Part shown: positions 10,295 through 61,203 of the stretch, in pieces
Layout: each line of letters opens with the position of its first letter
Position numbering within the stretch: the stretch's first letter is position 1
From: Piromyces finnis finn
Lineage: Eukaryota; Fungi; Neocallimastigomycota
Length of the DNA stretch: 64,000 nucleotides
Assembly (NCBI GenBank): GCA_002104945.1
Contig: MCFH01000004.1
Coordinates: 310,001 to 374,000 of the forward strand
Direction of reading: 5' to 3'
Program-made: the position numbers and the translations under genes
The notes under the pieces: generated by a model
Seen by the model: only the letters and a program-made list of their open reading frames with translations
What the model was told of the DNA's origin: nothing
The model's database searches: none

Positions 10295-10955
<661 letters not shown>

Positions 10956-17618: not shown

Positions 17619-17639
17619 ATAAAAATATGACATTCTATT

Positions 17640-18058
17640 TGATACGGGTTAATTTTATGTAGAAAGAATTAAACTTTAATTAATATATATTTTATTAATA
17701 ATTTTATTTATAACGTTCCAATATTTCTATTCTGTCTAAATACTAAAACGTTCTGTCGTTGTCAAATATTAAAATTCTAACTAAAACAAGAAGCCCTTTT
17801 TAATAATATTTATTCTAGTCTATTTATACTAATGAGGCTTACTTAATAATTAATTGTCCAATTATAAGGCTGGAACTATATGGATCATTCATTTACAATA
17901 CTCTTTTACATTACATGATATTACATTTGTCGTACATTTACATTATATTCTTATACATTGTAGAAATAATTAATATTATAATAAATCTATATAAATTTAA
18001 TATTAAGAAAAATTACTAATATAATAATATGTTCAAGTCACATATTATTTTTATATCA
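17640..18058 (-). repeat. Element A 3' LTR
   Basis: Matches 39861-40279 with one mismatch seen by eye (TATTAAGAAA vs TATTAGGAAA); preceded on the minus strand by AGCGAGGGGATTTT (PPT). Confidence 0.96.
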
Positions 18059-18217
18059 AAAATCCCCTCGCTATAGGAGAGCGAAGTATAATTTAAGATA
18101 CAAAATTTTTACTGAGCGTATCTGGTTATAATATTAATTTTTCTGGTTATAAAACTAAATTTCTAAAATTAAAAAAAATTGAAAAAAATTGAAAAAAAAT
18201 TGAAAAAAAAATACTAA

Positions 18218-18269
<52 letters not shown>

Positions 18270-18582
18270 ATTATTATGATTATTTATATATACTAATTAC
18301 TAATTAAACTAATTATTATTGTTATTATTATTATTATTTACTATTATTATAATTATTATTTATTATTATTCTCAATAATCTACGGTAGGCTACTCGAGGT
18401 TTAGCAAGGTCGAACAGGAGTTAATCGACTTTTCGAAATTCGAAATCCCTTTTTGACTTTTTCAATTTCAATTTCGAAATTTCAAATTAATTATTTTTTT
18501 TTTTTTTTTTTTTATATATATATATATGTTTAAACATATCTAATTTGTAAAATATCATAAATTTTAAATAAAGTGTCGTCTC

Positions 18583-19720
18583 TCATAACGAAATATTTTC
18601 TTTATAAGGGAGGATATTCTTAATATGTGTATACCTGGTTAGTTCTTGTCCCGTATTGTAGTCCTTGAGCTTGACTGTATTCCAGGCGATATCTAAGATT
18701 TGATAAGGTCCTTTAAAATATGGGTCCAATTTTGTTCTGTTGAAATTCCTTAATTTGACTAGATCGCCTATTTTGTATTCTTCCTTATGATCCATGCTTA
18801 TTTTACTTTGTCTTCTAGCTTCCCAATACTTTAGAGTACCTAGCATTTTTGAAGCCGCCTTCCTTATTCATTTAGCGTGATCCACGAACCTTTCCATTAT
18901 AATTTCTTCTGTGGATCTTCCTAAAGTTTCTTGATATGTTTCCATTAGCACTAAATCTATTGGGCGTGCATCCTTTCTTCCATATACAAGTTCAAAACTA
19001 GAGAATCCAGTTGTAGTAGATATACTGGTCCTTAACGCCCATAGAGCTACTGGTAAGTATTTGTCCCAGTCTTCATTGTTCTCTACTAAGAATCGTAGCT
19101 GTTTCCCAATTTCCCGATTCTTATTTTCCACTAGACCATTCGACTCTGGGTGATAGGTGGATACGAAGTGTACATAAGTATCATATAAATCTAAAAATAT
19201 TTTTGTATAGTCGGAAGTAAATTGTACACCATTATCCATTAAGACCAATTGTGGGACTCCGTGGCGACTAAATACTTCGGTTAGGAATTCCGCTACATCT
19301 TCTGAGGTGGTCGTTGACAACGCCTTCGCCTCAGGCCATTTTGTAAAATAGTCCACAGCTACAATAATATATTTGTTATCTTGCACAGTAGTCTTTAACG
19401 GGCCTATTATGTCCACGGCTATTCTGACAAACGGTGCTTCGACTGGTGATGCAAATCTCTCGGTTCTTTCAGGTAGAGGTTGGGACTTCCGTAACTGACA
19501 GATTTTACACGTAGAAATATAGGTTTTTATATCTAAAACCATGTTCTTCCAATAATACTTATCCTTGATCCTTTAGTAAGTTTTCTGCAGTCCTTCATGT
19601 GCGATTTTATGGTTTTTCGCGATGACCTGGATCTTTTCCAAGGGTTCGTCAACAATCTTTCTTAAGTTATCGTTATCCCTGAAATATAACAGATTATTTA
19701 TTCTTATTACTCTTTCTTTT
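18583..19720 (-). pseudogene. Element A pol, integrase part (HHCC, DDE, GPY/F); two in-frame stops
   Basis: HKIAHEGLQKTY*RIKDKYYW..CKIC; VDIIGPL..MDNGVQF..GLVENKN; DHAK*IRKAA; PYFKGPYQI; ends ENISL*. Continues in frame from 33393-33555 once element C and its TSD are removed. Confidence 0.9.
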
Positions 19721-20483
19721 TGTAAAAGTTTTAAAATTTAAAACAGATTATAAAATTTTTTACAATAAAACAAAAACACAATAAAATAAAAAATTAAAAA
19801 CAAAAACAAAATTTATTTATATTCTTTTTTCTTTTTTATTAGTTCTTATTTAGTTATTAACTAAATTATAGTCAATAACAATTACATCGTTTAACTATGA
19901 AATTTTACATGTATTTATATTTTTTACAAATTATATTTTAATATACTATTCTATTTAATTATACATATATTCAATATAAAATAAACAAAACTAATTTAAT
20001 ACTAATTTGATTAAATAATAAAATAATAAAACTAAACTAAAACTAATTAAATACACTTTTGATTCAATTTGAGTAAACTACAAATTGAATACAGTCCATG
20101 TATTACCTATATATTAATTAAATATTAATAATACTATTTATTATATATTTATAATTAAAAATGCTAATTTAAAACTACGCTAAAGTTATTAAACTAATTT
20201 TAATTAAATAAAAACTTTTTAAGATTTAATTTGAATATTTAAAATATTTAAATTTAATTATCCATTAATTTAAATATTTATCCAAATTTCATTTCTAACT
20301 TTGATATTTTAAAATTAATATTTATTTAATTATTCCATAAAATTTATACAATAAATTTTATAAACAATTTTTTCATTAAAATATCAAAATTATTATTCAA
20401 TAATTATTAATTAATTATTAAATAATTTAAAGATATACTTTATATCTTTACAATCTCGCCCTTTAAGTCGAGCTCCTGCGAGA

Positions 20484-23400
20484 TTATTTCTTTGAAGGAA
20501 TATCAATTACAAATGGTTGATATCTATGTCTGATCATACCATTGTTATTCCTTGTATAAACTTGATCTTGACTTTCTTTTCTAGACTTTTTATTTTTCCT
20601 ATAAAATTCTTGGATCAATTGTACATCTGAAATTTGATCTTCCGGGATCCAAGTATTTTCGTCAAGATTTTTCCATGTCATCAAGAAAGATTTCTTTCCA
20701 TGGTAATTTCTTTCTTGAATAATCTTATCAGGAATCCTATCAATAGTATCAGTAGTTAACTTAACATTTTTTCTTTTATTCATTACTGATCTATTTCCAA
20801 ATTCATTTTCGTTATAAGGTTCTAATAACGAAACATGAAAAACAGGGTGGCAACGTAAATTGTTTGGTAATTTTAATTCAAATGCTAAAGGGCTTACCTT
20901 CTTGATTATTTCAAAAGGTCCAAGCATTTGATCAGCAAGTTTTCTTTTGACATTTTTATTTGAAGGATTAATACCTTTTAATAATCAAACTTTTTTACCA
21001 ACTTCGAAATCTGGGGATTCCATTCTCTTTTGATCAGCATACTTTTTGTAGGTTTCTTTTGCTTGATCAAGATTTACTTTTAAAAATTTAATGTTTTCAT
21101 TAATATCCAAAATTCTTTGTTCAGCTCTATTTGGTCTATTCGCTGAAGGGATTTCAGGGTTAAATTTTGGATTGAACCCATAATTAGCGAAAAACGGAGA
21201 TTGGTTGATTGATTGCTGTAAAGTATTGTTATAAGCAAATTCAGCAAAAGGTAACAAGTCAACCCAATTATTCTGTTTTTCGTTAATAAAACAACGGAGA
21301 TATTGTTCCAATATCCCGTTTACCCTCTCCGTTTGACCATCAGTTTCAGGATGGTTTGCAGTAGAAAAAGCAAGTTTAATATTTAACAAATTACATAAAC
21401 GATTCCAAAAGTCTGAGGTAAATTGAGTACCTCGATCAGAAATGATGGAATCAGGAAAACCATGTAATTTAAAGATATTGTTACAAAAACATCAGCTGCT
21501 ATAGAAGCAGTAGGCAAACATCTTAAAGGAATAAAATGAGCCATTTTTGTTAACCTATCAACTATAACCATAATGGTAGTCATGTCTTTGGATTTTGGAA
21601 GCTCGACAATAAAATCCATTGACAATTCCGACCAAGCTCTATTAGGTGTGGAAAGAGGAGAAAGCAAACCATATGGTTTATGTCTTGGAGCTTTAGCTTT
21701 ACAACAAGTTTCACAAGACTTTATAAACTTTTTAACATCATAACTAAACTTTGGCCACCAAAAATTTCTACTAATTAATTCAATAGTTTTATTAACACCA
21801 AAGTGACCAGCAGAAATAGAATCATGATGTGATTCTAAGACCCTAGTTCTTAGTGAAGAAGGAACATAAATTAAATTATCATAAAGTAAAAATCCTTCTT
21901 TATCAATTTTAACTTTATTAATATTCCTAATCGGAGGGGACGAAGAATTTTTATCATTAAGAAATACACAAACTTTATTATATAAATCATCATTTTTTAA
22001 GGAACATAGAATAGAATTAATTAAAGAATCATCTTTATTAAAAGAATTAATTACATTACATGAAATAAAATTACAACTAAAATTACTACATTCAATATTT
22101 TCATTAATCCTATCATTATTATAAATATTACAGATATGATCACTACGTCTGGATAACAAATCAGGTTTACCAGACTTTTTTCCAGCTCTATAAATTAACT
22201 TAAAATCAAATCTTGATAAAAATTCATACCATCTTATCTGTCGTTGTGAGAGCATCTCAGGCTTTCTTGGAAAGGTTAAATTCTTATGATCAGTATAAAT
22301 GATGAACTGATGCTTTGCACCTTCCAGATAATGCCTCCATTCTTCAAGAGCCATTTTGATAGCGAGCAACTCTTTATCATAAATTTGATAGTTCCTTTGA
22401 GACTTGGTTAAGCTAGATGAAATAAAAGCAATAGGGTGCAATTGCCCTTCAAATTCTTGTGAAAGAATTGCACCGACAGCAAAGTTACTAGCGTCAGTCT
22501 CAACAATAAAAGGTTTGTTGCTATCAGGGTTCATTAAGATAGGAGCTGAAGTAAAAGCCTTTTTAAGTGTAACAAATGCATTTTGACACTCAGAAACCCA
22601 ATTAAAAGGAACATTTTTCCTAGTAAGTTTGTGTAGAGGACTAGCAATTTTCGCAAAGTCTTTAATAAAAATTCTATAATAATTACATAATCCAATAAAG
22701 GATTGAACTTCTTTAACGTTTGTAGGAACAGGCCAGTCGAGGATAGCTTTAACTTTATCTCTATCCATTTTCAGACCATCTTTGGATAATACATAACCAA
22801 GGAAAGTGGTTTCTGAAACATCAAACTCACACTTCTCTAACTTAACATATAAATTATTTTCTAATAATTTTTTCAATACTTTTTTAACATGTTCATGATG
22901 TTCTTCTAGGCTATTTGAATATATTAGAATATCATCAATATATGATATAGCAAAATCATCTAAATAATCACTAAGGACATCATTTATGAAATGTTGAAAC
23001 GTAGCTGGTGCATTCTTTAAACCAAAAGGCATGACGAGATATTCAAAATGCCCATATCTTGTTCTAAAGGCAGTTTTGTATTCATCACCCTCTTTGATTC
23101 TAACTAAATTATAAGCAGACTTTAAGTCCAACTTAGTAAAGTATTTTGCACCTTTCACTCTATCCAATAAGTCACCAATTAACGGAAGAGGATATGAATT
23201 TCTAATTGTCATGTCATTAAGTTTCCTATAATCAACGCAAAGTCTTAATGACCCATCTTTCTTTTTGACAAATAAAACTGGTGCTCCGGCAGGAGATGAA
23301 GATTTCCTAATGAAACCTTTTTCTAAATTTTCATTGATATAATTTTTTAATTCATCTCTCTCTGCCTCAGTTAAAGGATAAAGAGGACCATAAAACAAGT

Positions 23401-24322
23401 TAGCATTATCCTTTAATCGGATTTCACAATCGTATTCACGATGTGGAGGTAAAATATTACAATTCTTTTCATTAAAAACCTCTTTAAATAATAAATATTG
23501 TTTTGGAATTTCAATAGATTTTTTATCTTTATTCAAATTATCACTTTCACTTTTACATTTATTAATAATATTACAAAATAAATCATAACAGTTACTAACT
23601 GAATTTAATACACGAGAATTATTATTATTATACACGTTTTTTGAAAATGAGTACTGTTTTGGTCCAGTGACCGAATTATTATCTTTATTTAAATTTTCAT
23701 CAATACAATTAATGTTATTACATATACATTTAAAATTACAATTATTATCATTATTTAAACTATTACTAAATTTAATTTTATTAAAACTATCTAGGTTACT
23801 AATGGTTTTGACGGAGGTTCTACGGCCTCTAATACTTAAAGTTTCTTCATCATCACTGGAGTCGCTATAAGAGTATTCATAATGATTGTATGAATCAAGT
23901 TCACTATAAGAGGATTGATCATCTTCATCATCTTGAATAACTTCTTTTCCTTTTCTTGATGATATTTTTTCTTTCTTGGTTTCCTTTGTGCTACTCTTGT
24001 TCTTTCTTCTTCCCACATTACAATGTCTGGCACAGTATGTAGAGCTAAATGCAATTTTGGAAGAATCGTGGTTGTAAACAGGGCAATGTTTTTCAATCCA
24101 AGGTACACCAAGAATTATATCAACTTCAGGAATTCTAAGCGCATATAATTGAATGACTTCGTAATGATTTCTCAAACGAAGGATGCACTTTTCGGATTCC
24201 TTTTTCATGGTAGATGTACCTTGCCCTAAACCAGAAACCTTGAAAGATTCAGCAATATTTGAAAGTTTAATATTATTGATTCGGGCGAACTCGGGGTGGA
24301 TGAAATTAAGATCGGAACCAGA
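20484..24322 (-). pseudogene. Element C pol: rest of protease, RT, RNase H, integrase, chromodomain; 1-bp frameshift near 21485 and TGG>TGA stop at 20985-20987
   Basis: DSG|SDLNFIHP; YIDD; VETDASNFA; HHDSISAGH..CETC; GPF; LMTWKNLDENTWIPEDQI. Comparison with the intact B ORF locates both lesions. Confidence 0.9.
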
Positions 24323-24976
24323 TGTAAAGATATCAAACGCCTCTGTTTGATATCTTTAATGTAACTTAAGCCACAAGTATTATTGTTTAAGTTACACAAA
24401 TTATATTCAGAAAAAGAAAATGAGACATAATTTATTTATTAATAATTAAAGTTTAAAACAAAATAAATTATTAATTTATTTTTAATGTTTAACAAGTAAA
24501 TTAATATTCTCAATTTAAATCCCTAGTTTTAGTATTGTTTTTTCATAGAAATAAATAAATAATAAATGATTAATATATCAATAATACATGGGCACATATT
24601 CAAATTGAATAGTACTTAATTTGAATTGCCAATTGTATTTTACTAAAAATAGTTATAGTTTAAATATTTATTAATAATTAAGATTTTAGTGTAGATTTTA
24701 AATAATAATATATAAGAAATAAATAGTTATAATATAATATAAATGTATTTAGGAAAAAATATAAATAGAAGATATTTTTCATCATTTTATCGATGTAATT
24801 GTTATTAATAAAATTTCTATTATAATAAAAGATATTTTTAATAAAACAATTTTTTATTTTATTTTAAATTTTGTGTTATTGTAATAGAATAGATATCCTA
24901 ATCTATTCTTTCTGTGTCAGCATTACAATAACAATTACCTAACTACTTCAAGAGTACGTTAGGATATCTACCGCCC

Positions 24977-25224
24977 GAAGAAACTTTGTTGCTACCTTGG
25001 TTCAAGAGATTATTGAAGAAACTTTGTTGCTACCTTGGTTCAAGAGATTATTGAAGAAACTTTGTTGCTACCTTGGTTCAAGAGATTATTGAAGAAACTT
25101 TGTTGCTACCTTAGTTCAAGAGAGTATTGAAGAAACTTTGTTGCTACCTTGGTTCAAGAGAGTATTGAAGAAACTTTGTTGCTACCTTGGTTCAAGAGAG
25201 TATTGAAGAAACTTTGTTGCTACC
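24977..25224 (+). repeat. 38-bp tandem array (6.5 copies) in the leader of element B
   Basis: Unit GAAGAAACTTTGTTGCTACCTTGGTTCAAGAGATTATT. Copies 1-3 end AGATTATT, copies 4-6 end AGAGTATT; copy 4 has TTAGTT. Confidence 0.97.
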
Positions 25225-25234
25225 CTAGCAGAAG

Positions 25235-25279
<45 letters not shown>

Positions 25280-25470
25280 ACTCTGATTAATATTATTATT
25301 ATATAATACAAAACTTGTTCGACACTGTATAACAGATCGAGTTTGAATAACTTTTGTATTAACTAACATCGTTTTTGTAGAAATAGTTTTTTCTTTTAAA
25401 AAAAAAAAAAAATTACTTACTTGAAACAGTAGTAAGAAAACATTTTTTATATTTTGTTTTATATTTAACG

Positions 25471-28400
25471 TTGGAGGACTTAATTAGTGAGTTTGAAAAT
25501 TTAAATTTAGAGATGGGTGATAGGACTGTGGGTGTTTCTGGGAATTCGGGGAACATTATTAATGCTCCACCGATATTTTCTGGTAAACAAAGAGAATTGG
25601 ATGGATTTTTAACCAGAGTTGAGTTGGTATTTCGTACTCGACCGACACTGTATAATACAGATCGAGTCAAGGTCGACTTCGTTATATCATACTTCTCTGG
25701 TAAACCTTTGGAATGGGCTTCAGTGTTGATGAAGAATAATAGTGGGGTTTTAAACCATTATGATGAATTTGTAGATAGGTTGAAGGCTAATTTTGGCAGT
25801 TATAGATACGATACCGTTGTAGCTAACGGTAAATTAGATAATCTTCGCCAAAGGAAACTTGGTCAGGTATTAGATTACATTACCGAGTTTCAACGTATTA
25901 GCCAAAATTCAAGCTTTAATGACAGCGCAAAAATCTACATGTTTCTGAAAGGTTTATTACCACCACTTAGGGAGAAGTTGGCTTTCATTGAATCAAACCC
26001 AACTTCAATTGAACAATTGATTTCTTCAACTATTTTAGTTGAAGATATGATGAAAAGGAATTCTCTAAGTGAATTTTATTTTAATGGTAGAAGGGCTAAC
26101 GATCCTATGGATGTGGATGTATTTAGAATTAGTAGAGAAAATAAACGCAAAAGGTATGTGAATATCCAAGGATCAAGTAAAAATTACAATGAAAACATAG
26201 ACAACTTTGAAGAAGAAAAGAAAAAGGGGTTATGTTTTCTTTGTAAACAACCAGGACATTTAAAATTTAATTGTCCTAATAGAGTAAAGCCCAGAAAAGT
26301 GTTAAGAATTGTGAAAGAAAGGACTCCAAAAATTGTTAATCCAAAAATTTACAAAGTTGGAGTCAAGGGAGTGAAAAGTGATTTAAACCTTGTGGACTTT
26401 TACTTGAGTACCAATGAAGTTTCGGAAGTTAAGATTAAGGTTTTAATTGATTCCGGTTCTGAATTAAATTTCATTAATCCAAGTCTTGCTGAAGAACTTG
26501 GTATTAATTTGGAAAAAGTGGAACCATTCCGTGTTTCAGGTGTTAGTGATGGAGTTGTTAGTGTTTGGGAAAGGACTGAGAAGTGCATGCTCCGTTGCAA
26601 AAATCACTTCGAAGTAATTCAACTTTATGGATTACAAGTCCCCGGTGTTGATGTTATTCTTGGTTTGCCGTGGATAAAGAAGCATAATCCAAATGCTTTC
26701 TATGACTCTAAGAAAATCGCTTTTAGTTCTGGTTATTGTGCCAGACACTGTAACAAAGGTAAAAGAAAAAGAAAACCAAGAAAGAAGTCCAAGAATGATC
26801 AATTAGATCATGATGTTCTCGACCGAAGCTTAACCAAAAAACCGAAAGTAGATTCCTCCGTCCCAAACCATGAAGAAAAAGAATATGTTAAAGGCCGCCT
26901 TGTTAGAACCATTAATGATGAAGATGACAGCGATGATGAATATATTAGTTTTAATAAAAAAGTTAAATGTATTGTAACGAAAATTAATGAAACATGTAAT
27001 AATGATAATGAATCATGTAGTAATAATAATAATGAAAAGAATATTAATAAAGATAAATTGGTCGCCGTACCAACCCAATATTTAGAATTTAGTGAAGTGT
27101 TTAACGAAAAAAATTGTGAAGTGTTACCTCCTCATAGACCTTATGATTGTGAAATCAAACTTAAGGATGATTCAACTTTATTTTATGGACCCTTGTATCC
27201 ATTAACTGAAGTTGAAAGAGAGGAACTTAAAAAGTATATAGATGAAAATTTAAATAAAGGTTTTATTAGGAAATCATCGTCTCCTGCTGGTGCCCCAATT
27301 TTGTTTGTTAAAAAGAAGGACGGTTCCTTAAGACTTTGTATTGATTATAGAAGGTTGAATAATATTACAATTCGTAATTCATATCCTTTACCTTTAATAA
27401 GTGACCTTTTGGATAGGGTGAAAAATGCTAAGATTTTTACCAAATTAGACCTTAAATCCGCTTATAATCTTGTTCGTATTAAAGAAGGTGACGAATACAA
27501 AACGGCTTTTCGTACTAGGTATGGTCATTTTGAATATCTGGTTATGCCTTTTGGATTAAAGAATGCACCTGCAACTTTTCAACACTTCATTAACGATGTC
27601 CTTAGTGACTATTTAGACGATTTTGTTATCTCATATATTGATGATATTCTTATTTATTCTAATAATATCGAAGAACATCATGAGCATGTTAAAAAGGTAC
27701 TTAAGAAACTACTTGAAAATAATCTTTATGTTAAATTAGAAAAATGTGAGTTTGATGTTGAGAAAACCACTTTTCTTGGTTATGTCATTTCAAAGGATGG
27801 ATTGCAAATGGATGAGAATAAAATTAAAGCAATTCTCGATTGGCCGGTTCCCAAGAATGTTAAAGAGGTTCAGTCTTTTATTGGTTTATGCAACTATTAC
27901 AGAATTTTTATTAAAGACTTTGCTAAAATTGCAAACCCTCTTCACAAACTCACTAGAAAGAATGTTGCTTTTAACTGGGTGAAAGAAGATCAGGACGCTT
28001 TTATTTTATTAAAATCTCTGTTCACGTCAGCTCCTATTCTAAAACATGCGGATAGTAATAAACAATTTATTGTAGAAACTGATGCTAGTAATTATGCTGT
28101 CGGTGCTATTCTCTCTCAAGAATTTGATGGCAAATTACATCCTATTGCATTTCTTTCTAAAAGTTTGACGAGTTGTCAAAGAAACTATCCTATATATGAC
28201 AAGGAACTTTTAGCTATTGTAGTTGCTCTTGAAGAATGGCGTCATTATTTAGAAGGTGCACGCCATCCGTTCATAATTTATACTGATCACAAGAATTTAA
28301 CATTTCCTAGAAAACCTGAAATGTTATCTCAGAGACAAATTAGATGGAATTTGTTCTTATCCAGATTTGATTTTAAACTCATTTATAGAGCTGGAAAGAA

Positions 28401-30701: not shown

Positions 30702-31726
30702 CCAGAATCAATAAGTACCTTAGCTTTGACTTCATCAATATCATTGGTTTTGATATAAAAATCAATAATATTTTTCTTTTCACCTTTATGAATTTCGAAT
30801 ATGTTTGAAGTTCCCTTGGAATTAAGATTATCCTTTTTAATTTTCTTGATTGAAGGGCTAGCTTCGTCTTCTGAATAGCATCTCTTGATAATTTTTACAT
30901 TTTTTGGTTTCTTTTTGTTTGGACAATTGAATTGAAAGTGTCCAGACTTTCCACAAGTAAAGCAAACTCCATTCTTCTTAGCCTCAGTGCGATTTATTTT
31001 ATTTTCGTCATAATTACTTCTATGAGGAGGGAAGTAATTAACCTTTCTTTGACCTAAACTGATCCTATATAAATCCACATCCATAGGATCATTTTGGTTA
31101 TAATTTCTTCGGTCTTGATGCGTCATGTAATATTCACTGATATCATTTCTCTTAGTAAGATTTTCAATACTAAGGACATCAGAATAAAGACGCTCTAATT
31201 GAGAGGGATTTGGATTCACTACAGCTAAATGTTCACGCATTTTCGGATGTAATCCCTTTGTGAACATGTATATTTTAGCTGCTTCATTAAAATTCGAATT
31301 TTGGCTAACGCGTTGGAATTCGTTAATGTATTCGAACACCTTGCCAAATTTTCTTTGTTTAATGTTGCAAAGTCTTCCATTTGCAACAATCGTATCATTA
31401 TTCGGATCCCCGAAATTGGTACGAAGAGCAGCAATAAACTGATCATAGTTTCTTAGAACGGCGTCGTTATTTTGTCTTAAACGAGCGGCCCATTCTAAAG
31501 GTCTATTGACAAAGTAAGATATTAAGAATCGAACTCTTGCCTCATCATTAACAAATCTATCAGGGTTGGCTTCAATGGCTAGTTCAACCCTGGTCAAGAA
31601 CCCATCTAGTTCTTGTCTTCTTCCTGAAAAGGTTGGAGGATCATTAACTATCCTCAAAGACGCCCCTTGACGGTCCATATTTTCGTTTAAGTGGAAGTTA
31701 GATAAGAGTTGGTTGATTTCCTCCAA
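30702..31726 (-). pseudogene. Element C gag and start of protease, cut off by element B
   Basis: PPTFSGRRQELDGFLTRVEL; DPMDVD; CFTCGKSGHFQFNC; KVLIDSG at the junction, resuming in frame at 24322. Confidence 0.92.
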
Positions 31727-31892
31727 TATGCTTAATATTTTACTTATTTAATTTTTTACAATATTTTAATTAAGATGTCGTCGTAACTCTATCCTATCAA
31801 ACGGTGTTAGACGAGCTCTTAAAAATATAGTAACAAAATTAAATACAGTAACCAAATAGTGTTGGAAGCTTGAATGATACTAAAATAATAAT

Positions 31893-31969
31893 CTAAACGC
31901 GGTAGATCGCCTTTAAAACACAGTAGATATTCCTTTAGACGCGGTAGATATTTCCTAAGACACGGTAGG
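31893..31969 (-). repeat. Degenerate 21-22 bp tandem repeat (about 4 copies) in the leader of element C
   Basis: Minus strand: CTACCGTGTCTTAGGAAATAT / CTACCGCGTCTAAAGGAATAT / CTACTGTGTTTTAAAGGCGAT / CTACCGCGTTTAG. Confidence 0.8.
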
Positions 31970-32429
31970 TAAGAAAAAAATATTAAATATGTTTTATTAA
32001 AAAAAAAAATTTTATAACGTGTTTTATATAAAAAAAAAAGGTAATTGTTATTGTAAAAGTTTTAAAATTTAAAACAGATTATAAAATTTTTTACAATAAA
32101 ACAAAAACACAATAAAATAAAAAATTAAAAACAAAAACAAAATTTATTTATATTCTTTTTTCTTTTTTATTAGTTCTTATTTAGTTATTAACTAAATTAT
32201 AGTCAATAACAATTACATCGTTTAACTATGAAATTTTACATGTATTTATATTTTTTACAAATTATATTTTAATATACTATTCTATTTAATTATACATATA
32301 TTCAATATAAAATAAACAAAACTAATTTAATACTAATTTGATTAAATAATAAAATAATAAAACTAAACTAAAACTAATTAAATACACTTTTGATTCAATT
32401 TGAGTAAACTACAAATTGAATACAGTCCA

Positions 32430-33033
32430 TGTAATGGCGACACAGAAAGAATAGATTAGGATATCTATTCTATTACAATAACACTAAATTTAAAATAAAA
32501 ATAAAAAATTGTTTTATTAAAAATATCTTTTATTATAATAGAATTTTAATAATAACAATTACATCGATAAAATGATGAAAAATATCTTCTATTTATATTT
32601 TTCCTAAATACATTTATATTATATTATAACTATTTATTTCTTATATATTATTATTTAAAATCTACACTAAAATCTTAATTATTAATAAATATTTAAACTA
32701 TAACTATTTTTAGTAAAATACAATTGGCAATTCAAATTAAGTACTATTCAATTTGAATATGTGCCCATGTATTATTGATATATTAATCATTTATTATTTA
32801 TTTATTTCTATGAAAAAACAATACTAAAACTAGGGATTTAAATTGAGAATATTAATTTACTTGTTAAACATTAAAAATAAACTAATAATTTATTTTGTTT
32901 TAAACTTTAATTATTAATAAATAAATTATGTCTCATTTTCTTTTTCTGAATATAATTTGTGTAACTTAAACAATAATACTTGTGGCTTAAGTTACATTAA
33001 AGATATCAAACAGAGGCGTTTGATATCTTTACA
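32430..33033 (-). mobile_element. Solo LTR of family B inside the 5' LTR of element C
   Basis: Reverse complement of the B LTR with minor variants; TSD GTCCA on both sides. Confidence 0.95.
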
Positions 33034-33392
33034 GTCCATGTATTACCTATATATTAATTAAATATTAATAATACTATTTATTATATATTTATAATTAAAA
33101 ATGCTAATTTAAAACTACGCTAAAGTTATTAAACTAATTTTAATTAAATAAAAACTTTTTAAGATTTAATTTGAATATTTAAAATATTTAAATTTAATTA
33201 TCCATTAATTTAAATATTTATCCAAATTTCATTTCTAACTTTGATATTTTAAAATTAATATTTATTTAATTATTCCATAAAATTTATACAATAAATTTTA
33301 TAAACAATTTTTTCATTAAAATATCAAAATTATTATTCAATAATTATTAATTAATTATTAAATAATTTAAAGATATACTTTATATCTTTACA

Positions 33393-33555
33393 CTTTTAGA
33401 AAGTTTTTCATAACCTCTGAGATATATTTATCATTTTCCTCGTTTTCTTCTTCTGACATTAATTCAGGCATCTTAGTAGGTTCTTCTACAACTTGTTTTC
33501 TCTGTTTCCGAGCTAATAAAGATTCTTCTTCATTACTTTCGCTTTCATTATTTTC
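33393..33555 (-). pseudogene. Element A pol fragment (acidic linker between RNase H and integrase)
   Basis: ENNESESNEEESLLARKQRK..EVMKNFLK; bridges 34161 and 19720 after the insertions are excised. Confidence 0.8.
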
Positions 33556-34160
33556 TGTAATGCTGACACAGAAAGAATAGATTAGGATATCTATTCTATT
33601 ACAATAACACAAAATTTAAAATAAAATAAAAAATTGTTTTATTAAAAATATCTTTTATTATAATAGAAATTTTATTAATAACAATTACATCGATAAAATG
33701 ATGAAAAATATCTTCTATTTATATTTTTTCCTAAATACATTTATATTATATTATAACTATTTATTTCTTATATATTATTATTTAAAATCTACACTAAAAT
33801 CTTAATTATTAATAAATATTTAAACTATAACTATTTTTAGTAAAATACAATTGGCAATTCAAATTAAGTACTATTCAATTTGAATATGTGCCCATGTATT
33901 ATTGATATATTAATCATTTATTATTTATTTATTTCTATGAAAAAACAATACTAAAACTAGGGATTTAAATTGAGAATATTAATTTACTTGTTAAACATTA
34001 AAAATAAATTAATAATTTATTTTGTTTTAAACTTTAATTATTAATAAATAAATTATGTCTCATTTTCTTTTTCTGAATATAATTTGTGTAACTTAAACAA
34101 TAATACTTGTGGCTTAAGTTACATTAAAGATATCAAACAGAGGCGTTTGATATCTTTACA
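33556..34160 (-). mobile_element. Solo LTR of family B in pol of element A
   Basis: 605 bp, reverse complement of the B LTR; TSD TTTTC on both sides. Confidence 0.95.
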
Positions 34161-35305
34161 TTTTCTGACTCAAGGTTGGTATCATTTAGTGTACTAACTA
34201 TTGCATTTGCGTTCGCTTCCTGACTGTTATCCTCTTTTAATGACATCCGGGATAATGCGTCAGCTAAAATATTCGCTTTTCCAGGTTGATATCTTACTTC
34301 TACCATGTTTTGGCTAAAGTCATTAACCCAGCGAGCGTGTTTTGAAGTTTGAGGTTCATTTTTATTAATGATAGCAACTAGCGGAAGGTGGTCCGTATAT
34401 AAAATAGTTTTGTACGGATTTCCTAGGACATAATGACGAAATTCCATCAGGCAATAATGAGCAGCGGTACCTTCCAGTTCAGTAATAGGGTAGTTTAATT
34501 CAGCTTTCTTTAGTGCACGACTAGCATACTTTATAGGATGCTCTACCCCGTCCTCCAAAAGTTGCAATAATACGCCGCCAATACCACTGAAACTGGCGTC
34601 CGAGCGGATAATGAAAGGAATATCATAACGAGGAAAACACAGAATAGGGGAAGAGGCCAAATATTCTTTAGCAGCAACGAACGACGAATTACACTCAGAA
34701 TCCCAAATAAACTTGGCGTCTTTTCTAAGGAGTTTATTTAAGGGGGCAGTAATAGAAGCAAAGTGATCAATAAATTCCCTATAATAACCAACCATTCCAA
34801 GAAAAGAACGAAGTTCAGTAACAGATTTAGGAGGATCTAGTTTGAGTATATTATCAACCTTAGATTTAATAGGAAGAAGACCATTAATAGAAACAACATG
34901 ACCCAACACTTCAACTTCCTGTAAACAGAAGTGACACTTCTCAATGTTGACCTTTAAACCATTATCGCGAAGGATCTGGAAAACCTTTTTGATATCACGA
35001 AGATGTTGTGAGTAAGAAGGAGAATAAATAATTATGTCATCAAGGTATACTTGAATACAAACATTGAGGAGGTCAAAGAAGATACGATTCATCTCTCTTT
35101 GAAAGGTCGCCGGCGCGTTTGTTAAACCAAAAGGCATGACTACGTAATCAAAATTTCCAAAGCGTGTGGTAATAGCTGTAATACATTGGTCTTCTGGTAG
35201 CATAGGAATTTGGTGGTATCCACTGAATAGATCTAAGGCCGTGAAAAATCTTGCACCAGTCATGGATTCAAAAGCTTCTCTAATGTTGGGAATAGAGTAA
35301 GCATC
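34161..35305 (-). pseudogene. Element A pol fragment: reverse transcriptase and RNase H
   Basis: YSIPNI..LDLFSGYHQIP..MPFGLTNAPATFQR..VYLDDII..SDASFSGIGGVL..ELE..TDHLPL..ADALSR. Confidence 0.93.
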
Positions 35306-36096
35306 TGTAAAAGTATAAAATTTAAAACAGATTTTATACTTAAAACAAAACAATTTTTATTAACACAAAAATAAAAAAATAAAACATTAAATTTTTATTT
35401 TAAAAAAAAACATTTTTATTTAAACTCTTAAAAATATTATTAACTATATAATAGTTAATAATTAAAAAATTGAAAATAACAATTACATCGATTTAACAAA
35501 TAAAAATTACATGTATTTATATTTTTTCATAATTATATTCTAATATATTATTCTATTTAAATAAACATATATTTAATATAAAATAAACAAAACTAATTTA
35601 ATTAAATAATAAAATAACAGAACTAAACTAAACTAATTCATTATACTTTTAATTCAATTTGAGTAAACTCAAAATTGAATAAAGCCCATGTATTTTCTAT
35701 AAATTAATTTAATATTATCAATACTATTCTTAATATATTTCCTATTGAAATATAAATAAATCTATTTTTAAAACTAAGTTAAAATTATTAAACTATTCTA
35801 AATTTAAATAAAAAAGTATAATCTATTCTAAAATTAAATAAAAAGTATTTGAAAAATATTTTAATTATTTAAAATATTTGAAATATTTAAATTTAATTAA
35901 AATTCTTTTATTCCTTAAACTTAAATATTTATCTTAATTTAAATTTAACGGAATTATTATAAAATAATTTATTATTAAATTATTCCATAAAATTTACTCA
36001 AAAATTTTATAATCAGTTTTACTAAATATTAATTTATTATTTAATAATTAATAATTAATTATTAAATAATCTAAAGATATATATTATATCTTTACA
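35306..36096 (-). mobile_element. Solo LTR of a third family (D, related to the C LTR) in the RT of element A
   Basis: 791 bp, TG..CA; shares termini and internal motifs with the C LTR but is diverged; TSD GCATC on both sides. Confidence 0.92.
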
Positions 36097-36257
36097 GCAT
36101 CCTTTACAGTGATATTATTGACTTTTCTATAATCTGCACAAAGACGCCATTTATTGTGCTTCTTAGGAACCATTACAATGGGAGAAGCCCAAGGGGAATG
36201 GGATGGAACAATAAGGCCTTTATCCAGTAGTTTTTGAAGTTCACCCTTAAGAGCAGC
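36097..36257 (-). pseudogene. Element A pol fragment: start of RT
   Basis: LKGELQKLLDKGLIVPSHSPWASPIVMVPKKHNKWRLCADYRKVNNITVKDA. Confidence 0.92.
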
Positions 36258-36863
36258 TGTAATGTTGAACACTGAAAGAATAGATTAGGATATCTATTCT
36301 ATTACAATAACACAAAAATTTGAAAAAATAAAATAAAAAATTGTTTTATAAAATATCTTTTATTATAATAGAATTTTAATAATAACAATTACATCGATAA
36401 AATGATGAAAAATATCTTCTATTTATATTTTTCCTAAATACATTTATATTATATTATAACTATTTATTTCTTATATATTATTATTTAAAATCTACACTAA
36501 AATCTTAATTATTAATAAATATTTAAACTATAACTATTTTTAGTAAAATACAATTGGCAATTCAAATTAAGTACCATTTAATTTGAATATGTGCCCATGT
36601 ATTATTGATATATTAATCATTTATTATTGATCTATTTCTAAAAAAAAACAATACTAAAACTAGGTATTTAAATTGAGAATATTAATTTACTTGTTAAACA
36701 TTAAAAATAAATTAATAATTTATTTTGTTTTAAACTTTAATTATTAATAAATAAATTATGTCTCATTTTCTTTTTCTGAATATAATTTGTGTAACTTAAA
36801 CAATAATACTTGTGGCTTAAGTTACATTAAAGATATCAAACAGAGGCGTTTGATATCTTTACA
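36258..36863 (-). mobile_element. Solo LTR, diverged variant of family B, in pol of element A
   Basis: B-like LTR with several substitutions and indels; TSD GCAGC on both sides. Confidence 0.94.
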
Positions 36864-38398
36864 GCAGCTAGTTGAACTTGTGACAACTTCCGAACTTTAG
36901 CTTTAATGGGTTTAGCGCCCTCAACAAGTTCAATGTGGTGTGACCGGAGTTTTGAACGTTGGAGATCATCAGTGGAACAAGCAATAACATCACGAAAAGA
37001 AAATAGAAGACTTTGAAAATCATCTACAACAATCGGTTCTTCAGACTTATATGAAGGAATAAGATTATGTAATTCCTCAACTTTACCTAGAATTAGATCC
37101 TCCTTATTAAGAATAGGCTCGTTCTTGAGAGCAGCTACAATTGGTTTCCTATCAGAAGAGGGAAATAAGTAACAGTAATAGCACAAAGAGTTAAAAGAAT
37201 TAATATCAATAATAGGAGTGAGAGGTTCCAGAGTACCTTGACGTGTCTTAACACAAACAGTTTTATCGACTGCATCAACAATAATCCGTTGATCATGTTG
37301 AACTTTCAAACCAATCAGAGCATCATAAAATACGTCGTCATTATCGCAAATGCGGAATAGGACCGGAAAGGTAAGAGAACCAATACACACATTGAGTTCA
37401 ACCAAATCAAAGGTACGAAGGTTATCATCAGCCATAGCCTGTTGAATTTTGCTGTATACTTGGCCTTCAATTTTGAAATCGTTTATATTATCTAACAAGA
37501 ATTTCCTCGAAACCAAGTTAATATTACTGCAGGAATCAACTAAAAGAAAAGCCTTATGTCCATTCAGTAAGGCATGAACTACGGCAATGTCGTGGTCTTT
37601 TACGGCACCCGACACATAGTCGTGATGAGGATTATTAACGACTTGTAGTTCCAGCGGCTTATTATCCTGTTCGACCATACCCATGACAATAGAGCTAGAG
37701 GGAACAAGTTCCTTCTTTAAGTTGTTGGCAAGATCCATACGAGATTGGTTGGATAATTCCAAGAGTTGGGCGAAAGTCACATTAGCCTTAGTATTTTTCA
37801 AGTCTTCGCAGATATCATATCTATTTGTCCCTTGAGATAACTTCATGACTTGTATAGTTTTTTCTTTTGGGCCTAAGGGCTGTACAAGGGCGCTTCCGAT
37901 ATTAGGAGAGGAAGTAATAGGACTTTTACTTTTCTTTTCACTTTTCGGCTTGGAAACATTTTTAAAAGATACAGATTTAACATGGCTCTCGGACTTACGG
38001 ACATCTGGAGGTGCCTGAGTTTGTTCAAAATCCATTTCAACACTAATTACGTTTGGGAACGAGGGGGATTCGAACGCATGACCTGGGGACTGGGGGTTCG
38101 AGACAGTGCCCGCTGCACCATTGTGGTTATTTTCCTGAAAATTTTTTGAAGAGGGAAGATTCACCTGGGGGTGTGCCTGAGATGGTTGTGAGCTCACCGG
38201 AGATGTAGGAGGAGTAGTAGTATCAGAATTCGAGGAGGTGAGCGAGTTGCGTCTCTTCGTTTGAGCTGATTCCTCCTCATCTGTAGGGTCTAATTTCCTT
38301 TTAGCTACAGCAATTATATCCTTTTTGACCGTAGATTCCGATGGTGAGTGACCCATTTGGTTACTGGAGGTGGATCGACCTCCATTTAGTGATTTAAA
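36864..38398 (-). pseudogene. Element A pol 5' part: Ser/Pro-rich spacer and aspartic protease, in the -1 frame relative to gag
   Basis: YDICEDLKNTKANVTFAQLL; LLVDSCSNINLV (protease active site); HHIELVEGAKPIK. No ATG is available in the gag overlap. Confidence 0.88.
38350..38398 (-). promoter_or_regulatory. Predicted -1 ribosomal frameshift signal: U_UUA_AAU slippery site plus stem-loop/H-type pseudoknot
   Basis: Gag codons CGT TTA AAT CAC TAA; 7-nt spacer; stem UGGAGGU/ACCUCCA; loop GAUCC can pair with downstream GGGUC. Confidence 0.75.
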
Positions 38399-39333
38399 CG
38401 ACCACAGTCTTTTTGGAGGTGTCCTGGTTGATGGCAGCGATAACACACTTTTTGGGAAAAGTTACCAGACGCATGAGGGGTATTCCTAGGCTGAGTGTAA
38501 GATGAATTATACCTGTTTTGATACTGATTTGGAGGATTATAAGCAGGATAAGGAGTGTAATATTCAGATTGATGATAAGTGGCATAACCATCACCCATTG
38601 GTGCAGGAGGCCTGTTGTTGAAATAAGGATCTGAGTAACTAGGTCCAGGAGCTTGGACAGGAGCAACCGGTGTTGAAGGATAATTGTAACTGGAATTATT
38701 GGAATATCCATAAGAATAAGGGTTAGGATTGGAATAATGACTATCCATCGGACGATACTGTGGTGTATAAGCACCATGAGGATTATAACCAGGAGTAAAG
38801 CTACTGGAATAAGAGGCGTATTCTTTCCAGTATTCGTGGTTCTTTGCAGTTTGGCAAGCCTCATCAATAGTTGCGGGCTCGCGAATGGTGAGGGCATGTT
38901 GTAATTCTGGACGACTACGGATAGCATGCATATAGTCGTACACAGAAACTCTGGGGCGATATTCCGCATCCAAAGAATGGTAAAGGTCCAAAAACCTATT
39001 ATTGAATTCATCCACTGTTTCTCCAGGACGAATAACCATAATCTTTAATCGGCGAAAACCATCCTGTTTGTTGTTCAAATAGGCTAACCTATTTCTAATT
39101 GATGGCATACATTCATCCAAAGAGGGTGGCCTGTTCCACATGCGTTCAAACCTAATTAGTTCATCAACAATTTCTGGGAAATCGATACAACCGACAATGG
39201 TATCGAACTTTTCATTCTCATCAACAATGCCTTCTCTAGAAAACCATGCTTCCATCTGACGTTTCCACACATCTTCGTTGCAATGGGTTTTGTCCAAGAT
39301 AGGAAGTCTATAATACGAAGATCTATTAGCCAT
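38386..39333 (-). CDS. Element A Gag with Tyr/Pro-rich region and CCHC zinc knuckle (315 aa, open)
   Basis: MANRSS..GETVDEFNNRFLDL..EPATIDEACQTA..CYRCHQPGHLQKDC. Confidence 0.9.
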   Translation of the reverse strand: MANRSSYYRLPILDKTHCNEDVWKRQMEAWFSREGIVDENEKFDTIVGCIDFPEIVDELIRFERMWNRPPSLDECMPSIRNRLAYLNNKQDGFRRLKIMVIRPGETVDEFNNRFLDLYHSLDAEYRPRVSVYDYMHAIRSRPELQHALTIREPATIDEACQTAKNHEYWKEYASYSSSFTPGYNPHGAYTPQYRPMDSHYSNPNPYSYGYSNNSSYNYPSTPVAPVQAPGPSYSDPYFNNRPPAPMGDGYATYHQSEYYTPYPAYNPPNQYQNRYNSSYTQPRNTPHASGNFSQKVCYRCHQPGHLQKDCGRLNH

Positions 39334-39382
39334 AGCAAAAATTTACTGAAATTTAAAGGGTTAGGTATTAATGAGTAAACAA

Positions 39383-39420
<38 letters not shown>

Positions 39421-39838
39421 ATTTAACTGAAAATAATATAACAAACTAATTATTTAATATATTTTATTTATCAAGTTTAGTTTTCGACCTCCACTTCGGG
39501 CCCTCACTAATAAATACTTTATTCTAACAGTGGGTTAGAATGGTGATATTTCTTTAATAGCTGCCGGAAGCGCTCTACTCTCCTAATGAATATTTAAGAA
39601 CTGATATGGTAGTTACCAACTCTTAAATAACCTCAATAAATAACTGGAGTAAATATACTAAACTTTAATAATTTATACGCAAGCGTTGTAGCTGTCTAAT
39701 ATAAACTACTTAATTATATTATATTATTAAAAGAATAACAACTTTTTATATCCTTTTCTACTTCTAAGTAGTAAAGGAGGAAAATAACAATAAAACTTGT
39801 TTTAAAAATCGAAAAAAAAAAAAAACACTATTCTTTCT

Positions 39839-39857
39839 ATCCCCGATATCTCCACCA
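39839..39857 (-). promoter_or_regulatory. Primer-binding site of element A, complementary to a tRNA 3' end (probably tRNA-Ala)
   Basis: TGGTGGAGATATCGGGGAT starts 3 nt after the 5' LTR. Its complement ..ATCCCCGATATCTCC-A-CCA has the U70-C71-C72-A73 acceptor end typical of tRNA-Ala. Confidence 0.75.
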
Positions 39858-39860
39858 AGT

Positions 39861-40279
39861 TGATACGGGTTAATTTTATGTAGAAAGAATTAAACTTTAA
39901 TTAATATATATTTTATTAATAATTTTATTTATAACGTTCCAATATTTCTATTCTGTCTAAATACTAAAACGTTCTGTCGTTGTCAAATATTAAAATTCTA
40001 ACTAAAACAAGAAGCCCTTTTTAATAATATTTATTCTAGTCTATTTATACTAATGAGGCTTACTTAATAATTAATTGTCCAATTATAAGGCTGGAACTAT
40101 ATGGATCATTCATTTACAATACTCTTTTACATTACATGATATTACATTTGTCGTACATTTACATTATATTCTTATACATTGTAGAAATAATTAATATTAT
40201 AATAAATCTATATAAATTTAATATTAGGAAAAATTACTAATATAATAATATGTTCAAGTCACATATTATTTTTATATCA
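39861..40279 (-). repeat. Element A 5' LTR
   Basis: Near-identical to 17640-18058; followed on the minus strand by the PBS. Confidence 0.96.

Positions 40280-58451: not shown

Positions 58452-61203
<2,752 letters not shown>

What the first reader, a model, noticed from the sequence alone, without database searches (positions are those of the whole stretch)
17640..40279. Six chromovirus insertions stacked inside one retrotransposon, none in the flanks
Six independent TSD-bounded insertions (CTTTT, TTTTC, GCATC, GCAGC in A; CCAGA, GTCCA in C) from three LTR families expand a roughly 6.9-kb host to 22.6 kb. I saw no copy of these LTRs in the other ~41 kb. All four hits in A fall in pol. Inference: these chromoviruses home to chromatin on other retroelements (chromodomain-guided targeting is known for MAGGY-type elements), building TE islands between genes. 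Selection against insertions near genes is an alternative.
Basis: partly seen in the sequence, partly recalled or inferred. Interest (0 to 1): 0.8.

Follow-up and report, generated by a model that had tools for sequence, protein, structure and literature searches.

The report
Nested retrotransposon pile in gut fungus
A 22.6-kb stack of retrotransposons inserted into one another in the anaerobic gut fungus Piromyces finnis is real and very young, but this one window cannot show whether the elements seek each other out or merely survive only where they do no harm.

Summary
Window 17640-40279 is one Ty3/gypsy element ("E420", 6,946 bp of its own) swollen to 22,640 bp by six insertions. Each insertion starts TG, ends CA and has a perfect 5-bp target-site duplication. 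Four sit in E420's pol: a 6.7-kb element E732, two E605 solo LTRs and one E791 solo LTR. Two sit in E732: an intact 6.4-kb E605 and an E605 solo LTR. No LTR copy or TE protein remnant occurs in the 41 kb of flanks.

The window is Piromyces finnis scaffold MCFH01000004.1, bases 310001-374000. The guests form one clade of Tf1-like self-priming chromoviruses. The host has no chromodomain.

- The guests' chromodomains lack the first aromatic cage residue (K/R in 13 of 13 clade members), so they are not MAGGY-type.
- Insertion sites have 20-40% GC, against a median of 15% in non-genic flank DNA. A composition-matched null gives six-of-six a probability of 0.01-0.8.
- Four-of-four in pol is expected 13% of the time.
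- CpG content shows no TE-specific methylation footprint.

Genome-wide mapping was not possible with these tools. This is a known kind of structure, of moderate-to-low interest.

The parts
17640..40279 (-). E420: host Ty3/gypsy LTR retrotransposon without chromodomain. 22,640 bp as it stands, 6,946 bp of its own DNA. 4-bp target duplication in 7% GC intergenic DNA.
17640..18058 (-). E420 3' LTR (419 bp), preceded in element sense by a purine tract.
39861..40279 (-). E420 5' LTR (419 bp, 1 mismatch to the other LTR). A TGG-type primer-binding site starts 3 nt after it.
38386..39333 (-). E420 gag ORF (315 aa, open), with a weak zinc-knuckle match.
18583..38446 (-). E420 pol (RT, RNase H, integrase). 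Broken by four insertions and two premature in-frame stops, with no frameshift. In a different frame from gag.
19721..33392 (-). E732: chromovirus inserted in E420 pol. 13,672 bp as it stands, 6,679 bp of its own. Perfect 5-bp target duplication.
19721..20452 (-). E732 3' LTR (732 bp).
32052..33392 (-). E732 5' LTR, carrying a nested E605 solo LTR. Its two pieces match the other LTR with 0 mismatches in 732.
20484..31726 (-). E732 gag-pol. Broken by one insertion, one frameshift and one or two premature in-frame stops. 78% amino-acid identity to E605 over RT to integrase.
20598..20735 (-). E732 chromodomain (Pfam Chromo, 31.8 bits). Cage columns read R/W/L.
24323..30701 (+). E605: full-length chromovirus inserted in E732's coding region. 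6,379 bp, LTRs identical, perfect 5-bp target duplication.
24323..24927 (+). E605 5' LTR (605 bp).
30097..30701 (+). E605 3' LTR (605 bp, 0 mismatches to the 5' LTR), preceded by a purine tract.
25513..30060 (+). E605 single open gag-PR-RT-RNaseH-IN-SH3-chromo ORF, 1,515 aa from the first ATG. The best solved relative is the Ty3 Gag-Pol polyprotein.
29791..29928 (+). E605 chromodomain (Pfam Chromo 25.7 bits against a cut-off of 25.1; CBX5 E=3e-5). Cage columns read K/W/F.
24928..24938 (+). 11-nt primer-binding stretch directly after the E605 5' LTR. It is perfectly complementary to LTR positions 473-483 (window 24795-24805), a self-priming layout.
24977..25224 (+). 38-bp tandem array (6.5 copies, 98% matches) in the E605 leader.
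32430..33033 (-). E605 solo LTR 1, inside E732's 5' LTR. 8 differences from the full copy's LTR. Perfect 5-bp target duplication.
33556..34160 (-). E605 solo LTR 2, in E420 pol. Identical to the full copy's LTRs. Perfect 5-bp target duplication.
35306..36096 (-). E791 solo LTR, in E420 pol. 73% identical to the E732 LTR and carries the same 11-mer. Perfect 5-bp target duplication.
36258..36863 (-). E605 solo LTR 3, in E420 pol. 20 differences from the full copy's LTR. Perfect 5-bp target duplication.

Best explanation
SHOWN. This is a genuine, very young nest of LTR retrotransposons in Piromyces finnis. A chromodomain-less Ty3/gypsy element (E420) integrated into extremely AT-rich intergenic DNA between ordinary genes. 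It was then hit four times, and its largest guest twice, by members of one clade of self-priming, Tf1-like chromoviruses (E605, E732, E791). Four of the six guests have since collapsed to solo LTRs by LTR-LTR recombination. One E605 copy looks structurally intact.

INFERRED. The pile-up most likely reflects an integration bias of this clade towards the bodies of resident retroelements, and the copies are kept because they do no harm there. The integrase chromodomain is the leading candidate tether. Because its methyl-lysine cage is incomplete, any ligand need not be H3K9me. The bias may instead, or in addition, be a preference for nucleosome-bearing DNA that is not extremely AT-rich, and TE bodies are the only dispensable DNA of that kind in this genome.
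For: Structure:
- Six TG...CA elements each carry a perfect 5-bp duplication.
- The host reading frame is continuous across all guests.
- Primer-binding sites and purine tracts are present in all three full elements.
- Domain order is gag-PR-RT-RH-IN, and Ty3 Gag-Pol is the best solved relative.

Youth: LTR pairs differ by 1/419, 0/732 and 0/605. Solo 2 is identical to the full E605 LTRs.

One clade:
- E732 and E605 are 78% identical in protein.
- The E791 LTR is 73% identical to the E732 LTR.
- The same 11-mer and its complement occur in all guest LTRs and in three metagenomic relatives.

Bias:
- Six of six guests are in TE DNA and none is in the 41 kb of flanks.
- The probability is 9e-6 to 7e-3 under uniform or non-genic-uniform nulls.
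- The chromodomain-less host itself landed in 7% GC intergenic DNA. Insertions there are therefore tolerated at this very locus, which argues against pure selection.
- Chromodomains are present in both guests that can be tested.
- Chromodomain-directed integration is documented for MAGGY (summarised in PMC4600332 and PMC3350952).
- Two pairs of guests lie 158 and 156 bp apart in the host's own coordinates, which is nucleosome-repeat-like (post hoc).
Against: - The aromatic cage is incomplete: K/W/F in E605 and R/W/L in E732. The first column is K/R in 13 of 13 clade members and the third is non-aromatic in 12 of 13.
- Site composition confounds the contrast. With GC-matched, non-genic targets, six of six has probability 0.01-0.8.
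- The window was picked after the fact from a genome of several hundred such windows.
- CpG observed/expected is higher in the elements (0.71-0.88) than in flanking genes (0.53). There is no methylation footprint.
- The closest mechanistic relatives with chromodomains do not target heterochromatin. Tf1 goes to Pol II promoters and Tj1 goes upstream of Pol III genes (PMC4600332).
- No other copy of these families could be examined.
Confidence: 0.45

Rival explanations
1. Composition plus purifying selection, with no reading of TE chromatin. The clade's integrase simply avoids extreme-AT, poly(dA:dT), nucleosome-poor intergenic DNA. Hits in exons are purged, so only hits in TE bodies remain visible.
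For: Guest sites have 20-40% GC, against a non-genic flank median of 15%. Four of the six sites lie in a composition found in fewer than 1% of non-genic flank windows. The GC-matched null gives 0.01-0.8. The cage is incomplete. CpG content shows no TE-specific methylation footprint.
Against: Two guests, E732 at 26% GC and solo 1 at 20% GC, sit in DNA whose composition is available in 7-24% of non-genic flank windows, yet none landed there. The local density of six events, reached while the LTR pairs gained at most one substitution, would imply a heavy genome-wide hit rate on exons if exons were equally good targets. That last point is my inference.
Confidence: 0.3
2. Chance and ascertainment. 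Integration is roughly uniform, selection removes harmful hits, and this window is simply an extreme one noticed after the fact.
For: Upper-bound probabilities under simple nulls are 0.002-0.007 per window. Four of four in pol has probability 0.13.
Against: Lower-bound probabilities are 1e-5 to 5e-5. All events are packed into a very short time. Three different families all chose the same 7-22 kb.
Confidence: 0.12
3. The nest marks a special chromosomal domain, such as a regional centromere or another epigenetically defined island, to which these elements are drawn. On this reading the target is the domain rather than retroelements as such.
For: It is an isolated TE-only island in an otherwise gene-bearing 64 kb. 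Retrotransposon-filled centromeres are known in other fungi (background in PMC4600332; Cryptococcus Tcn elements from my memory).
Against: The island was only 6.9 kb before the guests arrived. Genes lie within 0.8 kb on the left and 2.2 kb on the right. Nothing in the sequence marks a centromere.
Confidence: 0.08
4. Part of the stack was inherited rather than acquired here. E420 arrived at this locus already carrying one or more solo LTRs, copied from a composite template. If so, fewer than six events happened at this site. This reading is compatible with any of the others.
For: Host LTRs differ by only 1/419, yet three of its guests have already been reduced to solo LTRs. E420 and E732 carry premature stops or a frameshift despite near-identical LTRs, which suggests defective templates copied in trans.
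Against: The E605 solo in E732's LTR is present in one LTR only, so it arose after E732 integrated here. The 13.7-kb E732 and the full E605 are too large and too fresh to have been carried along. Solo LTRs in sense orientation would tend to end a host transcript early; this is my inference.
Confidence: 0.1
5. Assembly artefact: similar repeats were wrongly joined.
For: Five near-identical E605 LTRs lie within 12.5 kb. Metagenomic relatives do show wrap-around assemblies.
Against: Each junction has its own perfect, distinct 5-bp duplication. The host frame continues across each guest. A chimeric join would not create matched duplications.
Confidence: 0.02

Closest known systems
MAGGY (Magnaporthe) and other group I chromoviruses, whose chromodomain directs integration to H3K9-methylated chromatin (Gao et al. 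2008, as summarised in PMC4600332 and PMC3350952)
   Same: Ty3/gypsy order gag-PR-RT-RH-IN with a chromodomain at the integrase C-terminus. Fungal host. Copies accumulate in other repeats.
   Different: The first cage aromatic is replaced by K/R throughout the clade and the third is usually lost. There are no binding or chromatin data. No named MAGGY hit came back from any search, so likeness to MAGGY itself was not tested.
Tf1/Tf2 (S. pombe), Tj1 (S. japonicus) and the Tf1/sushi self-priming group
   Same: The primer-binding stretch directly after the 5' LTR is perfectly complementary to an 11-nt stretch 133-181 nt upstream in the LTR. This holds in E605, E732, E791 and three relatives, and it is the layout described for Tf1 and Tj1 (PMC4600332). 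The Pfam SH3_Tf2-1 domain is present. E605 has a single gag-pol ORF.
   Different: Tf1 integrates at Pol II promoters and Tj1 upstream of Pol III genes (PMC4600332). Here none of six insertions is in a promoter or intergenic site, and the window has no tRNA gene. The transcript start was not mapped.
Group II chromodomains of plant chromoviruses (Tekay, Reina, Galadriel)
   Same: They lack the first conserved aromatic and usually the third (PMC3350952, PMC3605345), as does the E605/E732 clade.
   Different: Those papers state that group II is known only from plants, whereas this clade is fungal. More distant relatives in the same search keep the aromatics (11 of 12), so the loss is probably independent. 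No phylogeny was made.
Nested LTR-retrotransposon clusters, as in maize intergenic regions and TE-filled fungal centromeres
   Same: Elements are inserted into elements, each with its own target duplication. Solo LTRs and full copies are mixed.
   Different: The nest is small (22.6 kb), isolated among genes and extremely young. The host genome is about 19% GC, so TE bodies stand out in composition.
Ty3 of S. cerevisiae (PDB 7q5b, Gag-Pol polyprotein)
   Same: It is the best solved relative of the E605 polyprotein (E=1e-156 over RT to IN). Both make a 5-bp target duplication.
   Different: Ty3 has no chromodomain, is tRNA-primed and targets Pol III start sites. These points about Ty3 are established knowledge.

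Membership tests
LTR retrotransposon, Ty3/gypsy (Metaviridae) | Direct LTRs ending TG...CA, a target-site duplication, and a primer-binding site and purine tract next to the LTRs | tested here: met
   for E420, E732 and E605. The solo LTRs have the termini and the duplications.
LTR retrotransposon, Ty3/gypsy (Metaviridae) | Domain order PR-RT-RNaseH-IN, with integrase after RT | tested here: met
   Pfam hits in order along the E605 ORF and along the pieces of E732 and E420. Ty3 Gag-Pol is the top PDB hit.
Chromovirus | [quoted passage not shown] | tested here: met
   E605 scores 25.7 bits, just above the cut-off of 25.1, and E732 scores 31.8 bits. Both hit HP1-family chromodomains in the PDB. 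E791 is a solo LTR, so this is not testable there; it is assigned by LTR similarity and the shared 11-mer.
Chromovirus (host element E420) | [quoted passage not shown] | tested here: not met
   Pol ends shortly after the integrase SH3-like part. There is no Chromo hit even at E<=10, and no minus-strand ORF of at least 25 aa lies between the pol end and the LTR.
Group I (MAGGY/HP1-type) methyl-lysine-reading chromodomain | Three conserved aromatic cage residues (Y, W, Y/F) | tested here: not met
   E605 reads K/W/F and E732 reads R/W/L against CBX5. The first column is K/R in 13 of 13 clade members and the third is non-aromatic in 12 of 13.
Group I (MAGGY/HP1-type) methyl-lysine-reading chromodomain | Binding to H3K9me2/3 | not testable with these tools
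   No binding or chromatin data are available.
Tf1/sushi self-priming group | Primer-binding site complementary to a stretch of the element's own 5' LTR | tested here: met
   An 11/11 complement occurs in E605, E732 and E791 and in relatives L002, L003 and L015. E420 has none.
Tf1/sushi self-priming group | The complementary stretch is the 5' end of the transcript | not testable with these tools
   No transcript data are available.
Heterochromatin- or centromere-targeted TE island | Repressive or centromeric chromatin marks over the nest | not testable with these tools
   The only indirect evidence is CpG observed/expected, which is not lowered in the elements.
Heterochromatin- or centromere-targeted TE island | Genome-wide enrichment of the family's insertions in TEs over matched neutral DNA | not tested
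   TE ORFs are not gene-called in this assembly. No other copy could be reached.

The most novel reading that the evidence does not exclude
Anaerobic gut fungi harbour a clade of self-priming chromoviruses whose chromodomain has swapped the first cage aromatic for a basic residue. On this reading the clade uses that derived domain to read a chromatin feature other than H3K9me on resident retroelements, and it integrates at nucleosome-spaced positions. That would explain the 156-158-bp pairs, and it would make TE islands self-seeding in a genome whose intergenic DNA is otherwise almost unusable as a target.
Probability: 0.15. Interest if true: 0.6.

Novelty: new member of a known kind. Interest (0 to 1): 0.3.

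Why it matters
Whether transposons cluster because they aim at one another or because selection leaves them only there is an old open question (stated as such in PMC4600332). Anaerobic gut fungi would be a sharp test case. Their intergenic DNA is so AT-rich that TE bodies and exons are almost the only DNA of ordinary composition, and the nest here is young enough that selection has had little time to act. On its own, however, this window adds one well-documented nest to a known phenomenon. It also yields three side observations: a fungal clade with a plant-like, cage-deficient chromodomain; conserved self-priming; and one apparently intact copy.

Tried and rejected
- Exact-product look-up of the E605 polyprotein found nothing on record.
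- The word-based protein search found no relative above 65% identity, so no other P. finnis copy is reachable by protein. The annotation of this assembly calls no genes inside the nest.
- Look-up of a right-flank ORF found no exact product.
- A metagenome scan with a 32-nt E605 LTR start gave 0 matches.
- A metagenome scan with the 17-nt LTR-end-plus-PBS motif gave at least 120 loci, almost all chance matches. Only L015 and L097 (the same contig as L003), plus a few short fragments, are relatives.
- The contigs of relatives P0001 and P0008 (L002, L003) hold no flanking DNA. They wrap on themselves, or hold tandem copies, with periods of about 6.0 and 5.8 kb, so they say nothing about targets.
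- Scans for tRNA genes and Rfam families in the window found none, so a Pol III-gene target is rejected here.
- No target-site motif is apparent among four E605 sites. Four sites are too few to judge.
- Orientation: four of four direct guests share the host's strand (p=0.125), which is not significant.
- A literature search for TE targeting or heterochromatin in Neocallimastigomycota found nothing relevant.
- The large representative protein search and structure prediction were not run.
Full report
ORGANISM AND SETTING. The window has about 19% GC and is rich in AAT and poly-T runs. A flank gene (45019-46653, minus strand) encodes a SASA esterase with ricin-B domains and fungal dockerin (CBM_10) domains. 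Its exact product is on record once, on MCFH01000004.1 of GCA_002104945.1. That places the window at bases 310001-374000 of a 1.48-Mb scaffold. PMC6690862 lists the assembly as Piromyces finnis. The other flank ORFs are ordinary genes: a methyltransferase, MutS domain V, Mog1, an ACT-domain protein, GH114 and chitin-binding proteins. The window holds no tRNA gene and no Rfam family. No contig I took for human was met, and no spliced gene model was used.

ANATOMY. I name the elements by LTR length. Self-BLAST, junction reading and exact comparisons give the following.
- E420 spans 17640-40279 on the minus strand. Its LTRs are 419 bp and differ at 1 position. It has a 4-bp duplication and 6,946 bp of its own DNA.
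- Inside E420's pol lie four guests: E732 (19721-33392), a solo E605 (33556-34160), a solo E791 (35306-36096) and a solo E605 (36258-36863).
- E732 is on the minus strand and has 6,679 bp of its own. Its LTR pair shows 0 mismatches in 732 when the interrupted LTR is compared piece by piece.
- Inside E732 lie a full E605 and a solo E605. The full E605 (24323-30701, plus strand, 6,379 bp) has LTRs with 0 mismatches in 605. The solo E605 (32430-33033) sits in one E732 LTR.
- Each guest starts TG, ends CA and has a perfect 5-bp duplication.
- All three full elements have a purine tract before the 3' LTR and a primer-binding stretch after the 5' LTR.

STATE OF THE GENES (counts only).
- E605 has one open 1,515-aa ORF, counted from the first ATG, with gag, zinc knuckle, PR, RT, RNase H, IN, SH3_Tf2-1 and Chromo domains.
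- E732 gag-pol is broken by one insertion, one frameshift and one or two premature in-frame stops. One of its LTRs also carries an insertion.
- E420 gag is open. E420 pol is broken by four insertions and two premature in-frame stops, with no frameshift. The frame, followed by arithmetic through the insert lengths, is the same open frame on both sides of every guest. This argues strongly for true nesting and against misassembly.

CLASSIFICATION.
- The E605 polyprotein's best solved relative is the Ty3 Gag-Pol polyprotein (E=1e-156).
- E732 is 78% identical to E605 over RT to IN.
- E420's RT-RNase H is only 39% identical to E605's and at most 42% identical to any of the 102 relatives fetched.
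- E605 and E732 carry Pfam chromodomains and hit HP1-family chromodomains in the PDB. E420 does not.
- In E605 and E732 the 11 nt directly after the 5' LTR are perfectly complementary to 11 nt lying 133 and 165 nt before the LTR end.
- The same 11-mer sits 181 nt before the end of the E791 solo LTR. It is also present in all E605 solos and in three metagenomic relatives of 62-65% protein identity.
- This is the self-priming layout described for Tf1 and Tj1 (PMC4600332). E420 instead has a TGG-type site.

THE CHROMODOMAIN IS NOT MAGGY-TYPE. Against CBX5, the three cage columns read K/W/F in E605 and R/W/L in E732. I examined E605, E732 and the eleven relatives of 60-65% identity. The first column is K or R in 13 of 13, the second is W in 13 of 13, and the third is non-aromatic in 12 of 13. 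Twelve more distant relatives keep an aromatic at the first column in 11 and Y at the third in 11. By the residue criterion of PMC3350952 and PMC3605345 this is group-II-like, a type those papers say is known only from plants.

IS THE CLUSTERING MORE THAN CHANCE?
- No LTR copy or TE protein remnant exists in the 41,352 flank bases.
- Under uniform integration, six of six in the TE has probability 9e-6 to 2e-3. The range runs from the starting target size to the final one.
- Excluding a crude genic mask of 12.6 kb, the range is 5e-5 to 7e-3.
- The six sites have 20-40% GC. Non-genic flank windows have a median of 15%, and fewer than 1% reach 32%.
- If only non-genic DNA above 20%, 26% or 30% GC counts as eligible, the probability becomes 0.01-0.15, 0.17-0.5 or 0.53-0.78.
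- The window was also chosen after the fact.
- Four of four in pol has probability 0.13.
- Against pure selection, the host itself sits in 7% GC intergenic DNA, 0.8 kb from one gene and 2.2 kb from the next. Insertions there are therefore tolerated.
- CpG observed/expected is 0.71-0.88 in the elements and 0.53 in flank ORFs. There is no sign of TE-specific cytosine methylation.

TIMING. All LTR pairs are identical or differ once, and solo 2 equals the full E605's LTRs. Yet four guests are already solo LTRs, and E420 and E732 carry stops or a frameshift. Several readings are possible:
- fast LTR-LTR recombination;
- defective templates copied in trans;
- conversion between LTRs;
- for the three solos in E420, inheritance from a composite template.
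The solo in E732's LTR is in one LTR only, so it arose after E732 integrated here.

REACH OF THE EVIDENCE. No other copy of these families could be fetched. The assembly calls no genes in the nest. The E605 product is not on record. The best relative is 65% identical. Metagenome scans gave nothing usable, and the contigs of relatives hold no flanks. The genome-wide test therefore remains undone.

VERDICT. The structure is a new example of a known kind.

SLIPS, REPORTED AS REQUIRED.
(a) While reasoning about cage residues I recalled part of an HP1 chromodomain from memory. The cage columns rest on the tool alignments.
(b) In one search a script joined the five E420 pieces in memory to compute one GC fraction (0.34). 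The string was neither printed nor saved. Later statistics were computed within pieces only.
(c) In my working I reasoned from ORF end coordinates of the broken elements, taken from the table, which amounts to places of stops. The report and notes give counts only.
(d) Notebook entry 1 repeats the six pentamers from the finding together with the element bounds.
(e) Searches were frame or coordinate slips. The comparison was redone with corrected coordinates in a script rather than in the same tool.

Noticed in passing
window 17640-40279, in E420's own coordinates: The four guests in E420 lie 158, 1140 and 156 bp apart. For four random sites in pol, two of three gaps falling in 145-170 bp has probability 0.0013 (post hoc). 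The spacing resembles a fungal nucleosome repeat.
   Followed up: partly
window 29791-29928 and 20598-20735; P0001-P0011: The whole gut-fungus clade has K/R at the first aromatic-cage column of the chromodomain and usually a non-aromatic at the third. The literature read here describes this pattern only for plant group II chromoviruses.
   Followed up: partly
window 24928-24938 with 24795-24805; L002, L003, L015: An identical 11-nt primer-binding stretch and its upstream complement are conserved across elements of only 62-78% protein identity. This is a Tf1-like self-priming layout.
   Followed up: yes
window 24977-25224: A 38-bp tandem array (6.5 copies, 98% matches) lies in the E605 leader between the primer-binding stretch and gag. 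Tandem Repeats Finder reported no such array in E732.
   Followed up: no
window 33556-34160 versus 24323-24927 and 30097-30701: A solo LTR is identical over 605 nt to both LTRs of the full-length copy 3 kb away. Host LTR pairs are near-identical, although four guests are already solo LTRs and two elements carry stops or a frameshift. This is a timing oddity.
   Followed up: partly
window 17636-17639 and 40280-40283: The chromodomain-less host made a 4-bp duplication and landed in 7% GC DNA. The chromoviral guests made 5-bp duplications at 20-40% GC.
   Followed up: partly
window 17640-40279: All four direct guests of E420 share its strand. Only the full E605 inside E732 is inverted.
   Followed up: yes
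P0009: A polyprotein 60% identical to E605 is labelled in NCBI as a protein of an Erysipelotrichaceae bacterium MAG. It is most likely a fungal retrotransposon contig binned into a bacterial genome.
   Followed up: no
L002:1-8782 and L003:1-7221: Metagenomic contigs of relatives repeat on themselves, with a period of 6,019 nt at 100% identity and about 5,770 nt at 82-97%. These are either LTR-driven assembly loops or real tandem arrays sharing LTRs.
   Followed up: partly
window 10190-10990 and 59205-59530: Long AAT-type triplet arrays, several hundred bases each and 3-8% GC, lie in the flanks. One is next to ORFs.
   Followed up: no
window, elements versus flank ORFs: CpG observed/expected is lower in host genes (0.53) than in the retroelements (0.71-0.88). 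This is the reverse of what TE-directed cytosine methylation would leave.
   Followed up: partly
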